A DNA stretch of 49,169 nucleotides from assembly GCA_943704425.1 (NCBI GenBank), contig CALSCP010000335.1, forward strand, positions 1 to 49,169, in the 5' to 3' direction. Under the pieces are notes generated by a model that saw nothing but the letters and a program-made list of their open reading frames with translations, made no database searches and was not told where the DNA came from. This document shows positions 19,978 through 41,710 of this stretch, one piece after another. Numbering within the stretch: the first letter of the stretch is position 1; each line of letters starts with the position of its first letter. This DNA comes from Ministeria vibrans ATCC 50519 (Eukaryota > Protista > Filasterea). The position numbers and the translations under genes are program-made.

Positions 19978-19986
19978 AAAAAAAAA
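19978..19986 (-). terminator. Pol III-type T9 terminator after the tRNA 5' half
   Basis: Nine T on the minus strand beginning 2 nt after G37. Confidence 0.6.
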
Positions 19987-19988
19987 CA

Positions 19989-20105
19989 CCGGAGGGCAGC
20001 GCCTTATCCATTGGGCCATGGTCGCTGACAACAAACGGAAAGCGGCCACTGGGACTCGAACCCGTTACTTTTCAAAAAAGACGTTCTGAAAAAGAGTCTC
20101 TGCCT
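19989..20105 (-). tRNA. Circularly permuted, intron-containing tRNA-Arg(CCG)
   Basis: Minus strand order: 3' half (20105-20093 + 20063-20041, with a 29-nt intron at 20092-20064), a 15-nt linker, the 5' half (20025-19989), then TG-T9. Joined: GCGACCA UG GCCC AAUGGAUA AGGC G CUGCC CU CCG GA GGCAG AGACU CUGGG UUCGAGU CCCAG UGGCCGC U (73 nt). Anticodon and T stems are perfect and the acceptor stem has 6/7 pairs. Confidence 0.85.
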
Positions 20106-20135
20106 CACTCGAGGGGGCAAATTCCCTTAAAATGG

Positions 20136-20142
20136 TATATAA
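20136..20142 (-). promoter_or_regulatory. Putative TATA element upstream of the permuted tRNA
   Basis: TTATATA about 31-37 nt upstream of the first tRNA nucleotide (A38). Confidence 0.35.
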
Positions 20143-35900: not shown

Positions 35901-38249
35901 ATTGTGTCATTTGCATGTCGGGTGCGCTGCCCGACGTGCCTATGGCACTCATTGCGTTGGGTCTGCACTCAAGCAGTCAAACAGGCCGCGCATGCGTGCT
36001 TGGGTACCGTTCTCAAAAGGCGGGTGCTCGGCGCCACGACCGCATACAGGCGGACCAACGTGCGTACAGCAAGTTACGACTCATTTTTGGCGACACCTCG
36101 TCCTTTTTCGGTGCACCTCGCATTGCGTCCAAGTTTCATATCCGATCCTGTGGCCACATGATGCACGTCAGCTGTGCGGCCACCTACATTGAGTCGCTGC
36201 ATCCCGAAGCGGTCCCCAACAGCTCGCTGAGCGTCGAATTTCGCTGTCCACTCTGTCGTCGTGTCGCCAACATGTACATTCCCATTGTGCCATCGTGTGG
36301 AATCGGTGCCGATCCTCGCACAACTGCACCCACCTCAACAACAACAACAACCAACAACAACAACAGCAACAGCAACAACGCCCGTCGAAGCGTCATCAAC
36401 TACAGCGGACGGTATTGGTAGTAGCGAGAGGCGTCGTTCGCCGGTGTTTGTGATGGAGTCGTCCTCTGGCGAGTCCGTCACGGTGTTTCGGAAGCGCAGC
36501 TTGAGCGGCCGTTCCCTGCGCGACACGCCATCACCTCGTGCTGCGGCGCGCCTCGCCTCCGTCCAGAATGACCGGCTGAGCATGTATCGACACTTGAAGA
36601 AGGGCACCCAAGACTTTGTCTCGAGTGTGGCCAGCCAGATCGGCTCGATTGAACCAGTGGTGTCGTTGCTCGAGCTGTTGCGCACGGTGGCGGTTGATGC
36701 AAGTGTGGCCGCGACGTCGCTCGAGAATTGCTCGCCTATTGCCATGCGCACCTACCGCGCACTGGTGTACAGTGTCGCCGGTGCGATTCCCGCGGCACTC
36801 GAACAATCGAATCGTCTTGTCGCCCCGTTTGGCCAACGCTTGCATGTCTACGACGAGCTTGTGTTGCAGTACGACCCGAACACACCGACACGTCGCTCCG
36901 AGTCACACCCGCTGACACTCCTCTCGCGCGACCAATCGATCTGTTTCCTCTATCTTTTGCTGCACCCATGCAAGGCCGAGGGTCGCACTGGACCGACGCG
37001 CGACGCAGTACGAGTGCGTGAGTACTTGCGCGGCTGCTTGCGAGCCACCTTGGTGCAGGCGTGCATTGTGGTATTGTCGAACATGACAGAGGATGAGCTC
37101 GCGCGTGTGCGCCTTCAGTCGTTCTGGCAGGCGTATGTGGGAGACGCGATGGAGGTGGACGAGGACGAGGACGACGAGGAGCTGCTGGTTGCTGCACACG
37201 AGCGCAAGTGTGCAATGGTGTTTTCCGAGGTGACGTCGTGGCTCAACATGGCTCAGTTTGTTGGAATGTCGACCAAGACTTCGTCTCTCCGTGAGCATCT
37301 GTCGCGTGCCCATGATGCGGTCGCCACTGCCGAGAAGAAGCCGAGTGCTCTAGCTCAATGGCAGCAGACAACCTCAAAAGCACCAGGCGCAGCTGCAGCA
37401 CTACCAACATCAGCAACAACATCAACAACAACAACAACAACAGCAGCAGCAGCAGCAGCAGGTGTAGAATTGGAGTCGAGTGACGACGATGCGTTGCGCT
37501 TGCGCATTCTGTCTCAATTGGATCGGTTGTGTACGCCTCTATTGCGACTGGCGCTGTGGTACACTCATGTGTTTGTGTCACGGCGAGGGAATGAGCGTGT
37601 TCCACGTCGCGATCGACCTTCGCCGCGTCTTGAGGACGACGTCAACGACACGGCCATCAATTATCTGTTGGCACTTGAGATGGCGCAGGACCCTGCCGGG
37701 GCATGGGATGTGCTGCGACGACGATGGGTTTGTCACGAGTGGCTCTACAGCATGTCGAGTGTGGCGCCCTCCCAGACGTGGGTCATTACGCCCCCTTTGG
37801 CGCTGTACGCCCGTCCGCGACTGCAGAACCTGCCGCGAGTCTACACCGACCTGCACGCGCGCATTGTGGGTGCCCCATGCAATCTGTGTCATGGCGTGCC
37901 CAAACGACCCTGTGTGTGTCTTCTCTGTGGCGCCATTGTGTGCGTGGCGGAGAAATGCTGCACCGTCAATCGACTGGGCGAGCTGACGACGCACTCTCGG
38001 TCCTGTGGTGGAGGCACGGGACTGTTTCTTGAAGTAGAGGCAACTACGGTTCTCATTGTCATTGGCCAGCGGAACTGCATTTGGAATTCACCCTATCTGG
38101 ATGCGCACGGCGAGGAGGACGTCAATCTGGCGCGTGGTCGTCCGCTCTTCCTCGACGAACAGCGCTACCAGTCGCTCGAGACGCAGTGGCTGGAGAGTAG
38201 TCTCAACGAGTCGGTGGGTCGGTGGCACTGGCACACGACGACCATGTGA
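31506..38249 (+). CDS. UBR3: UBR3-like N-degron E3 ubiquitin ligase (multi-exon; apparent frameshift near 36351; start uncertain)
   Basis: UBR box CGFLW..AYRCITCQKSPCTSICADCF..DHTGHDFYMFKSQSGGACDCG, WRRNG, split RING (CVIC...SCGHMMHVSC...FRCPLCRR), and a C-terminal CLLCG...YLDAHGEEDVNLARGRPL domain. Confidence 0.88.
32845..32950. repeat. (TTA)n microsatellite in a UBR3 intron
   Basis: Directly visible. Confidence 0.9.
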
Positions 38250-38337
38250 AAAAGAAGTAGCGAGCGACTGTGTGTGTTGAAAAAGAGAGAGTGAGAGCAA
38301 GTGCGAGAGTATGATGGAAATTGTATGGATTGATAGT

Positions 38338-41710
<3,373 letters not shown>

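What the first reader, a model, noticed from the sequence alone, without database searches (positions are those of the whole stretch)
20064..20092. Non-canonical 29-nt intron in the tRNA T-stem (50/51) with bulge-helix-bulge geometry
Seen: removing TTTTCAGAACGTCTTTTTTGAAAAGTAAC restores a perfect T stem, CUGGG/CCCAG. Independently, the precursor folds as a central helix GACU/AGUA (3 of 4 paired), bulges CU|U and AC|G, and an intron hairpin UUUCAGAA/UUUUGAAA. Cutting after the second nucleotide of each bulge gives exactly these splice sites. Known: eukaryotic tRNA introns are almost always at 37/38, and ectopic BHB introns typify archaea and C. merolae. Inference: this organism has a position-independent, archaeal-like tRNA endonuclease specificity.
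Basis: partly seen in the sequence, partly recalled or inferred. Interest (0 to 1): 0.8.

Follow-up and report, generated by a model that had tools for sequence, protein, structure and literature searches.

The report
T-stem intron in scrambled tRNA-Arg gene
A 29-base insert splits the T-stem of an arginine tRNA gene whose two halves are also in swapped order; it has the fold cut by tRNA-splicing enzymes, a gene design so far described only in a few algae and archaea, here in a non-photosynthetic protist with animal-like proteins.

Summary
On the minus strand, removing window 20064-20092 joins CU to GGG and gives a perfect five-pair T-stem. The cut sites fall after the second base of two 3-nt bulges that flank a 4-position helix (3 of 4 paired), next to an 8-bp intron hairpin.

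Positions 38-73 (20041-20105) lie upstream of positions 1-37 (19989-20025), with a 15-nt spacer between them. A promoter-like motif shared with other tRNA genes lies upstream, and a T9 run lies downstream.

The gene is single-copy and is the only tRNA-Arg(CCG) gene I found. In the same 29.7-Mb genome I verified further permuted genes and ectopic inserts with the same geometry:
- D-arm 22/23
- T-stem 51/52
- T-loop 55/56 and 59/60
- a 29-nt insert in the only U6 hit

The genome has Sen2, Sen34, Sen54, Sen15 and RtcB, and no photosystem or LHC genes. Its Sen2 is most like animal Sen2.

This is a new member of the Cyanidioschyzon-type disrupted tRNA genes, apparently outside algae. The same scan had already noted T-stem and other ectopic introns on other contigs of this genome.

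Weak points:
- there are no RNA data
- T5 and T6 runs lie inside the predicted transcript
- the outer helix h is missing
- there is one acceptor mismatch

The parts
20129..20140 (-). Upstream TATA-like promoter motif (ATATACCATTTT). It starts 35 nt before position 38.
   Evidence: A strict form of the motif is found within 90 nt upstream of 11 of 30 nuclear tRNA genes (intact, intron-bearing and permuted), against 0.007 expected per 90 nt.
20106..20128 (-). 5' leader of the predicted precursor. Its last bases (CGAG, then UG) pair with anticodon-loop positions 32-34 and form the 3' bulge of the terminal 37/38 motif.
   Evidence: H is 3/4, including the C32-G pair 3 nt before the cut. The bulges are GG|U and UG|A.
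20093..20105 (-). Exon a of the 3' half: tRNA positions 38-50 (A38, anticodon stem 3' strand GGCAG, variable loop AGACU, C49, U50).
   Evidence: Pair-by-pair cloverleaf check by coordinates.
20064..20092 (-). The finding: a 29-nt ectopic intron between positions 50 and 51. Layout: 1 nt, an 8-bp hairpin with a 6-nt loop, 4 nt of the central helix, then 2 nt.
   Evidence: It is single-copy in the genome. It contains a T6 run and, together with U50, a T5 run.
20041..20063 (-). Exon b of the 3' half: positions 51-73 (GGG, T-loop TTCGAGT, CCCAG, acceptor 3' strand UGGCCGC, discriminator U73). CCA is not encoded.
20026..20040 (-). 15-nt spacer between the 3' end (position 73) and the 5' end (position 1). 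It would be removed from the circular intermediate by RNase P and RNase Z.
   Evidence: Other permuted genes of this genome have spacers of 5-15 nt.
19989..20025 (-). 5' half: positions 1-37 (acceptor 5' strand, D-arm with A14, G18, G19, A20, anticodon stem 5' strand, CU-CCG-G).
   Evidence: The D-arm is nearly the same as in the other Arg genes of the genome.
19978..19988 (-). Trailer UG followed by a T9 run, the probable Pol III terminator.
   Evidence: In 20 other nuclear tRNA genes the first T-run after the gene is mostly T8-T12 or longer.

Best explanation
Window 20064-20092 (minus strand) is an ectopic, relaxed bulge-helix-bulge (HBh'-type) tRNA intron. It lies between positions 50 and 51 of the T-stem of a circularly permuted nuclear tRNA-Arg(CCG) gene (19989-20105).

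Inferred pathway:
1. Pol III starts downstream of the shared TATA-like motif and stops at the T9 run. The transcript reads leader, positions 38-50, intron, positions 51-73, 15-nt spacer, positions 1-37, trailer.
2. The intron hairpin and the GACU/AGUA helix present two 3-nt bulges. The splicing endonuclease (Sen2/Sen34 with Sen54/Sen15) cuts after the second base of each bulge, and RtcB joins CU to GGG. Only then can the T-arm form.
3. Leader and trailer form an ordinary eukaryote-style 37/38 motif (anticodon stem, C32-G pair, 3-nt bulges). Cutting and ligation there give a circular RNA.
4. RNase P and RNase Z remove the spacer, and CCA is added.

Shown here: the sequence anatomy, its recurrence in the genome, and the presence of the enzyme genes. 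Inferred: transcription, every cleavage and ligation, and the order of steps.
For: - The cloverleaf is complete. 19 of 21 stem pairs are standard. U8, A14, G18, G19, the T-loop TTCGAGT and U33 are present, as are A20, C35 and G36, which I know as arginine identity elements (from my own knowledge).
- The cut rule gives exactly the boundaries that restore the T-stem. The loose motif occurs at about 0.4% of random cut-site pairs.
- The same rule holds at cloverleaf-defined boundaries in other genes. Lys(UUU) 51/52 has H 4/4 and h' 6. Gln(CUG) 22/23 has H 4/4.
- Arg(ACG) on C883 carries inserts at 55/56 and 59/60. Their removal reproduces the T-loop of its intron-less paralog on C491.
- Permuted-order pattern: 13 hits against 1 in the control. 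Normal-order pattern with an insert: 11 hits against 0.
- The upstream motif is shared and the T9 terminator is in place.
- The gene is single-copy and the insert is not a repeat. It is the only CCG gene among the Arg-type D-arms. CGG makes up 12% of Arg codons in the sampled ORFs.
- Sen2, Sen34, Sen54, Sen15 and RtcB genes are present.
- Precedent exists in C. merolae: 42 introns including one in the T-stem, four genes both permuted and intronic, and a TATA-like element plus T-stretch (PMC3728597).
Against: - There is no RNA evidence of any kind.
- T5 and T6 runs lie inside the predicted transcript and could stop Pol III before the 5' half is transcribed.
- The central helix has a G.A mismatch and there is no outer helix h. 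The BHB conformer is about 1 kcal/mol above the local MFE, and the whole precursor does not fold better than shuffles.
- The acceptor stem has an A4.C69 mismatch.
- A permuted tRNA-Arg(UCG) gene on C2431, and another UCG gene in a tRNA cluster, could read CGG by wobble. The CCG gene is therefore not demonstrably essential.
- No ortholog was found for a conservation test.
Confidence: 0.7

Rival explanations
1. This is a dead or dying gene. A once-functional permuted tRNA-Arg(CCG) gene was inactivated by a 29-nt hairpin insertion, or is not transcribed through its internal T5/T6 runs. CGG is read by tRNA-Arg(UCG).
For: - Internal T5 and T6 runs.
- The A4.C69 mismatch.
- A weak BHB: H 3/4, no h, and not the MFE fold.
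- Arg(UCG) genes exist.
- There are no expression data.
Against: - Every other cloverleaf feature is intact, and the promoter motif and terminator are in place.
- The insert sits in the exact register of the cut rule that holds in four other genes.
- Internal T6 runs also occur in the Lys(UUU) intron and the Arg(UCG) spacer, while terminators are mostly T8 or longer. This suggests short runs are tolerated.
- The insert is not a repeat.
Confidence: 0.2
2. The insert is a real intervening sequence, but it is removed by something other than the TSEN/RtcB pathway, for example another nuclease-ligase pair acting on the hairpin.
For: - The outer helix h is absent and H is imperfect.
- The subunit set looks like that of organisms whose TSEN is known (from the literature, PMC3728597) to measure from the mature domain to 37/38.
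Against: - The 3-nt bulge / 4-bp helix register recurs at all well-defined ectopic inserts. That register is the signature of splicing-endonuclease substrates.
- C. merolae processes such motifs (PMC3728597).
Confidence: 0.07
3. This is a chance resemblance. There is no tRNA gene here, only two tRNA-like fragments near each other.
For: ARAGORN and Rfam report nothing.
Against: - All four stems, the conserved loop bases, the promoter motif and the terminator line up.
- The permuted pattern is found 13 times against 1 in the reversed control.
Confidence: 0.03

Closest known systems
[quoted passage not shown] 2007; 2013, PMC3728597)
   Same: [quoted passage not shown]
- An extra intron sits in one half (there: Leu(UAA), Arg(CCU), Gly(CCC) x2).
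- Introns occur outside 37/38, including one in the T-stem and several in the T-loop.
- The motifs are relaxed BHB types (hBH, HBh').
- There is an upstream TATA-like element and a T-stretch in place of usable A/B boxes.
   Different: - The host shows no photosystem or LHC genes, and its Sen2 is animal-like.
- A Sen15-family gene is present. None was found in C. merolae.
- T5/T6 runs lie inside the transcript here, whereas the paper reports no termination signal between exons.
- The anticodon (CCG) and intron position (50/51) differ.
- A 29-nt size class recurs.
Archaeal non-canonical BHB introns and permuted tRNAs (Crenarchaeota; Thermofilum pendens, PMC3218864)
   Same: - Introns occur at many cloverleaf positions and are cut at 3-nt bulges flanking a 4-bp helix.
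- Some are nested or ordered introns.
- RtcB-type ligation is used.
   Different: - Archaeal broad-specificity enzymes are (alpha-beta)2 or epsilon2 EndA types (PMC5829648, abstract).
- This genome has the four eukaryotic subunit families.
- Archaeal motifs are usually the strict hBHBh' form, whereas this one lacks h.
Atypical tRNA introns of Chondrus crispus and of the Guillardia theta nucleomorph; permuted tRNAs of Ostreococcus/Micromonas and chlorarachniophyte nucleomorphs (reviewed in PMC13578239)
   Same: These are eukaryotic nuclear-type tRNA genes with ectopic BHB-like introns or permuted order.
   Different: - All are algae or algal-derived nuclei.
- According to the review, the green-lineage cases have permuted genes with canonical introns, and Chondrus has atypical introns without permuted genes.
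- This genome has both, as C. merolae does.
Canonical eukaryotic 37/38 tRNA intron
   Same: The termini of this permuted gene mimic one: anticodon stem, a pair between position 32 and the base 3 nt before the 3' cut, and 3-nt bulges.
   Different: The finding itself lies at 50/51. A ruler measured from the mature domain cannot reach it, and the T-arm cannot even form before the intron is removed.

Membership tests
BHB-type (splicing-endonuclease) tRNA intron | Two 3-nt bulges on opposite strands, separated by a 4-bp helix, with cuts after the second base of each bulge | tested here: met
   The bulges are CU|U and AC|G. The helix is GACU/AGUA with 3 of 4 pairs, a relaxed form. The register is identical to Lys 51/52, Gln 22/23 and Arg(ACG) 55/56 and 59/60.
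BHB-type (splicing-endonuclease) tRNA intron | Strict hBHBh': both flanking helices h and h' have more than two pairs (definition in the PMC3728597 Fig. 2 legend) | tested here: not met
   h' is 8 bp but h is absent. This is therefore the HBh' / BHB-like class, which the same paper also lists for C. merolae.
BHB-type (splicing-endonuclease) tRNA intron | Removal restores a canonical cloverleaf | tested here: met
   The T-stem has 5/5 pairs and a 7-nt T-loop TTCGAGT. All stems were checked by coordinates.
BHB-type (splicing-endonuclease) tRNA intron | Cleaved by the splicing endonuclease and ligated in vivo | not testable with these tools
   Only the genes are shown: Sen2, Sen34, Sen54, Sen15 and RtcB.
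Circularly permuted tRNA gene (C. merolae type) | [quoted passage not shown] | tested here: met
   Positions 38-73, a 15-nt spacer, then positions 1-37.
Circularly permuted tRNA gene (C. merolae type) | Leader and trailer form a BHB-like motif at the junction | tested here: met
   Junction at 37/38: H 3/4 with the C32-G pair, bulges GG|U and UG|A, anticodon stem as h, and no h'. Four other permuted genes give H of 2/4 to 4/4 at the same junction.
Circularly permuted tRNA gene (C. merolae type) | Expressed through a circular intermediate | not testable with these tools
   No RNA data are available.
tRNA pseudogene inactivated by an insertion | Loss of invariant bases or stems; the insert belongs to a repeat family or has target-site duplications | tested here: not met
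   The cloverleaf is intact except for A4.C69. The insert is unique in the genome, and its flanks (CU / GGG) are not duplicated.
Spliceosomal or group I/II intron | GU-AG ends with a branch site, or a large catalytic fold | tested here: not met
   The insert begins UU and ends AC and is 29 nt long. No Rfam intron family matches.

The most novel reading that the evidence does not exclude
A heterotrophic protist with animal-like proteins carries a genome-wide system of BHB-dependent scrambled genes. It includes permuted tRNAs and introns in the D-arm, T-stem and T-loop (some needing ordered removal), and even a 29-nt BHB-type insert in the ACAGAGA box of its only detectable U6 snRNA gene. All of these would be handled by an ordinary four-subunit eukaryotic TSEN plus RtcB. 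If so, position-independent (and possibly substrate-independent) BHB splicing is not an algal or archaeal peculiarity. A canonical TSEN could then do it, perhaps with a preferred 29-nt intron architecture.
Probability: 0.5. Interest if true: 0.85.

Novelty: new member of a known kind. Interest (0 to 1): 0.62.

Why it matters
In the library searched, including a 2026 review, ectopic tRNA introns and permuted tRNA genes in eukaryotes are described only for algae and algal-derived nuclei. They are used to argue either for retention of archaeal features or for lineage-specific invention.

A T-stem intron in a permuted gene of a non-photosynthetic organism that has animal-like TSEN2, Sen15 and RtcB would have three consequences:
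- It would widen the phylogenetic range of these gene designs.
- It would give a system in which a canonical four-subunit TSEN can be tested on substrates that a ruler mechanism cannot explain.
- It would warn that standard tRNA finders miss a large part of the tRNA set of such genomes. ARAGORN and Rfam saw nothing here.

Tried and rejected
- ARAGORN and Rfam on the window and on the 300-nt region, exon pieces included, found no tRNA call.
- A DNA search of the own genome for paralogs found only the gene itself.
- A metagenome scan for orthologs (exons fixed, intron 0-30 nt, spacer free) gave 0 hits.
- A generic permuted-Arg pattern gave 23 loci. Nearly all are ordinary tandem tRNA clusters, and only L089 looks permuted. 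No comparative or covariation test was therefore possible.
- Organism identity stayed open. The exact-protein look-up found nothing. The best PNGase hits are 33-45% identical and spread over several supergroups.
- The mitochondrial cox1 and cob ORFs are full of UGA=Trp codons, so they could not be searched by reference.
- The boundaries of the Glu(CUC) D-arm insert and of the Asp(GUC) 12-nt insert could not be resolved with the cut rule.
- The whole-precursor fold is no better than shuffles (z = +0.98), so global folding energy is not evidence here.
- The joined step was left out. The spliced, un-permuted mature tRNA was not assembled for any search or tRNA finder, and the cloverleaf was checked pair by pair on window coordinates. 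The only in-script joining was index arithmetic on locus L104, to ask whether the second T-loop insert of Arg(ACG) gains its helices once the first is removed.

Full report
**What is there**

Read on the minus strand, the region 19978-20140 is a complete but scrambled tRNA-Arg(CCG) gene. From 5' to 3' it contains:
- a TATA-like motif (20129-20140)
- a 23-nt leader
- tRNA positions 38-50 (20093-20105)
- the 29-nt insert of the finding (20064-20092)
- positions 51-73 (20041-20063)
- a 15-nt spacer (20026-20040)
- positions 1-37 (19989-20025)
- UG and a T9 run (19978-19988)

A pair-by-pair check on window coordinates gives these stems:
- acceptor stem 6/7 (A4.C69 mismatched)
- D-stem 3/4 (C13.A22, shared with the Arg(ACG) genes of this genome)
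- anticodon stem 5/5
- T-stem 5/5

The loops are D-loop AAUGGAUA, anticodon loop CU-CCG-GA, variable loop AGACU and T-loop UUCGAGU. The discriminator is U73. CCA is not encoded.

ARAGORN and Rfam detect nothing, as expected for a gene that is both permuted and split. That joined step is left out.

**The observation**

Removing 20064-20092 joins C49-U50 to G51-G52-G53 and gives the stem CUGGG/CCCAG. The bases flanking the two boundaries differ, so no shifted pair of cuts gives the same product.

I applied the standard rule: each strand runs central helix, 3-nt bulge, next helix, and the cut falls after the second bulge base. The 5' site then lies in CU|U and the 3' site in AC|G. Between them is the helix GACU/AGUA (A-U, C-G and U-A paired, G.A not). 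Beyond them is an 8-bp intron hairpin with a 6-nt loop.

There is no outer helix h, so by the definitions in the PMC3728597 Fig. 2 legend this is an HBh' (BHB-like) motif and not a strict hBHBh'. Its energy is -4.6 kcal/mol against -5.7 for the local optimum, in which the hairpin is simply two pairs longer.

A loose form of the motif appears at about 0.4% of all cut-site pairs in shuffled precursors (about 23 of 5670). Finding it at the one pair that independently restores the T-stem is therefore unlikely by chance. On its own, however, the motif would not pick out the cut sites.

**Is the gene real and alone?**

- The 166-nt region matches only itself in the 29.7-Mb assembly. The gene is single-copy and the insert is not a repeat.
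- A search for the Arg-type D-arm finds four genes: this one, two Arg(ACG) genes and one Arg(CCU) gene. A fifth Arg gene, Arg(UCG), turned up in the permuted-order search.
- None of the 64 best Rfam tRNA hits is an Arg(CCG) gene.
- CGG makes up 35 of 297 Arg codons in sampled ORFs of the window.
- A strict form of the motif upstream of this gene occurs within 90 nt upstream of 11 of 30 nuclear tRNA genes of all kinds, against 0.007 expected (by eye). In the four permuted genes split at 37/38 that carry it, it starts 34-41 nt before the first coding base, and here 35 nt.
- Terminators of this genome's tRNA genes are long, mostly T8-T12 or more. This gene ends in T9.

**The genomic context makes the case**

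A pattern for T-arm, 19-49 nt, then D-arm (permuted order) hits 13 times against 1 for the reversed control. I set aside the mitochondrial contig, the tRNA clusters and one chance hit. Six permuted genes then remain:
- this Arg(CCG) gene
- Lys(UUU)
- Arg(ACG)
- Gly(UCC)
- Gly(CCC)
- Arg(UCG), which is split in the D-loop

Their acceptor stems pair 6-7 of 7. The five that are split in the anticodon loop are all cut at 37/38, with A38 and a pair between position 32 and the base 3 nt before the cut.

The normal-order pattern with a 42-72 nt gap hits 11 times against 0. It yields canonical 37/38 introns of 12-29 nt and D-arm inserts.

At boundaries fixed only by the cloverleaf, the same cut rule holds:
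- Lys(UUU), T-stem 51/52, 44 nt: H 4/4, h' 6 bp.
- Gln(CUG), D-arm 22/23, 29 nt: H 4/4.

The strongest case is a pair of Arg(ACG) paralogs with identical exons and spacer. The copy on C491 is uninterrupted. The copy on C883 has two T-loop inserts. One is 29 nt at 55/56 (H 3/4, h' 9 bp, h 5 bp). The other is 22 nt at 59/60, whose full motif (H 4/4, h' 4, h 5) appears only after the first is removed. Removing both reproduces the paralog's T-loop exactly.

The T-stem intron of the finding is thus one of at least five ectopic inserts that obey one rule in this genome. Every nuclear Arg gene I found is disrupted in some way.

**The machinery and the host**

The genome encodes:
- two catalytic endonuclease subunits; the one on C1078 is a Sen2, and nearly all of its best 120 named relatives are animal Sen2 at 40-49% identity
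- a Sen54-family gene
- a Sen15-family gene
- a multi-exon RtcB ligase gene

This is the ordinary eukaryotic set, fuller than that reported for C. merolae, where no Sen15 was found.

No photosystem reaction-centre or LHC family member was found in the whole assembly. A PNGase of the window has no close relative in 5.8 billion proteins (best 33-45% identity, scattered over supergroups). A 55.9-kb, 25%-GC contig with about 27 tRNAs and a tRNA-Trp(UCA) looks like the mitochondrial genome.

I could not name the organism. Notes of other agents in this scan call it a filasterean-like relative of animals. My own data show only that it is non-photosynthetic and that its Sen2 is animal-like.

**Weak points**

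- No RNA evidence exists.
- The predicted transcript contains a T5 run (U50 plus four intron bases) and a T6 run. In several model eukaryotes, to my own knowledge, runs of this length terminate Pol III.
- Against that, the Lys(UUU) intron and the Arg(UCG) spacer also contain T6, one Arg(ACG) insert contains T5, and real terminators here are much longer. This fits a higher threshold for termination but does not prove one.
- The central helix has a mismatch, h is missing, and the acceptor stem has an A.C mismatch.
- Arg(UCG) genes could cover CGG by wobble.
- Two metagenome scans gave no ortholog, so conservation could not be tested.

**Comparison with what is known**

The closest known system is the set of disrupted nuclear tRNA genes of C. 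merolae. It has permuted genes, 42 introns at many positions including one in the T-stem, four genes that are both permuted and intronic, relaxed BHB motifs, and a TATA-like promoter and T-stretch (PMC3728597).

A 2026 review still lists only algae and nucleomorphs for such eukaryotic genes (PMC13578239). The 40 papers from 2015 onwards listed in a full-text search for 'permuted tRNA' (46 hold the term) include none whose title or abstract opening concerns a non-algal eukaryote.

The finding is therefore a new member of a known kind. The notable points are the host, the full four-subunit TSEN set, and a recurring 29-nt intron size. That size is seen here, in Gln 22/23, in Arg(ACG) 55/56, in Ser(CGA) 37/38 and in U6. 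These inserts show no obvious sequence similarity by eye and share the layout 1 + stem + loop + stem + 4 + 2.

**Related lead checked in passing**

The only U6 snRNA match in the genome has a 29-nt insert without GU-AG ends inside ACAGAG|A. It shows H 4/4 (ACAG/CUGU), 3-nt bulges and a 6-bp hairpin. If that insert is removed by the same enzyme, recognition does not depend on the tRNA body at all.

**Verdict**

- Observation: confirmed.
- Interpretation as an ectopic BHB-type intron: likely (0.7).
- The claim about enzyme specificity: plausible but untested.
- The same scan had already noted T-stem and other ectopic introns, and this very permuted gene, on this genome.

Noticed in passing
L104 (G000:C883, about 103450-103640) versus L051 (G000:C491:39600-39760): These are two permuted tRNA-Arg(ACG) paralogs with identical exons and spacer. 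One is uninterrupted. The other has two T-loop inserts, 29 nt at 55/56 and 22 nt at 59/60. The second gains its full BHB only after the first is removed. This implies recent intron gain or loss and ordered splicing.
   Followed up: yes
L106 1474-1502 (G000:C648): The only U6 snRNA hit in the genome carries a 29-nt insert inside the ACAGAGA box. It has no GU-AG ends and shows tRNA-intron geometry: H 4/4 ACAG/CUGU, 3-nt bulges and a 6-bp hairpin.
   Followed up: partly
L060 (G000:C2431:223900-224130, minus strand): This is a tRNA-Arg(UCG) gene permuted in the D-loop, not at 37/38, with an additional insert at the canonical site. Its spacer contains a T6 run. All five nuclear Arg genes found are disrupted.
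   Followed up: partly
Several loci: window 20064-20092; L071 (Gln); L104 (Arg ACG); L106 (U6); L072 (Ser CGA): Inserts of exactly 29 nt recur with no obvious sequence similarity by eye but the same layout: 1 nt, an 8-9 bp stem with a 4-6 nt loop, 4 nt of central helix, then 2 nt. This may be a size constraint of the enzyme or a common mode of origin.
   Followed up: partly
G000:C585:36000-36600, C2083:7100-8100 and 38100-38550, C2093:9000-9400 (L001-L009, L020-L025): These are dense clusters of 5-9 uninterrupted tRNA genes with no T-runs between them. Their anticodon sets are unusual for a eukaryotic nucleus (GCG, GAC, GGA), and they include 74-nt 'Leu' tRNAs. The origin is unknown (viral, bacterial-like or a special nuclear array).
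   Followed up: no
G000:C1523 (about 55.9 kb; L004, L006, L010 and others): This is a probable mitochondrial genome: 22-28% GC, about 27 tRNA genes including tRNA-Trp(UCA), and cox1 and cob ORFs with many UGA codons.
   Followed up: partly
L073 (G000:C2263:35960-36070) and L064-L066 (G000:C313): tRNA-Glu(CUC) has a D-arm insert of about 23-29 nt, and three tRNA-Asp(GUC) copies have a 12-nt anticodon-loop insert. I could not fix their boundaries with the cut rule. They may be nested or have non-standard motifs.
   Followed up: partly
L089 1009-1064 (public record VFQN01002046.1): This is a candidate permuted tRNA-Arg(CCU) gene (T-arm and acceptor 3' strand, spacer, then 5' half ending in CU-CCU-AA and a T-run). 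It lies in an unrelated public contig of 41% GC.
   Followed up: no
L012, L040/L041, L044 (upstream and downstream of intact tRNA genes): Several uninterrupted tRNA genes have long leaders or trailers (15-55 nt) between the promoter motif or terminator and the mature ends. Some contain hairpin-like repeats.
   Followed up: no
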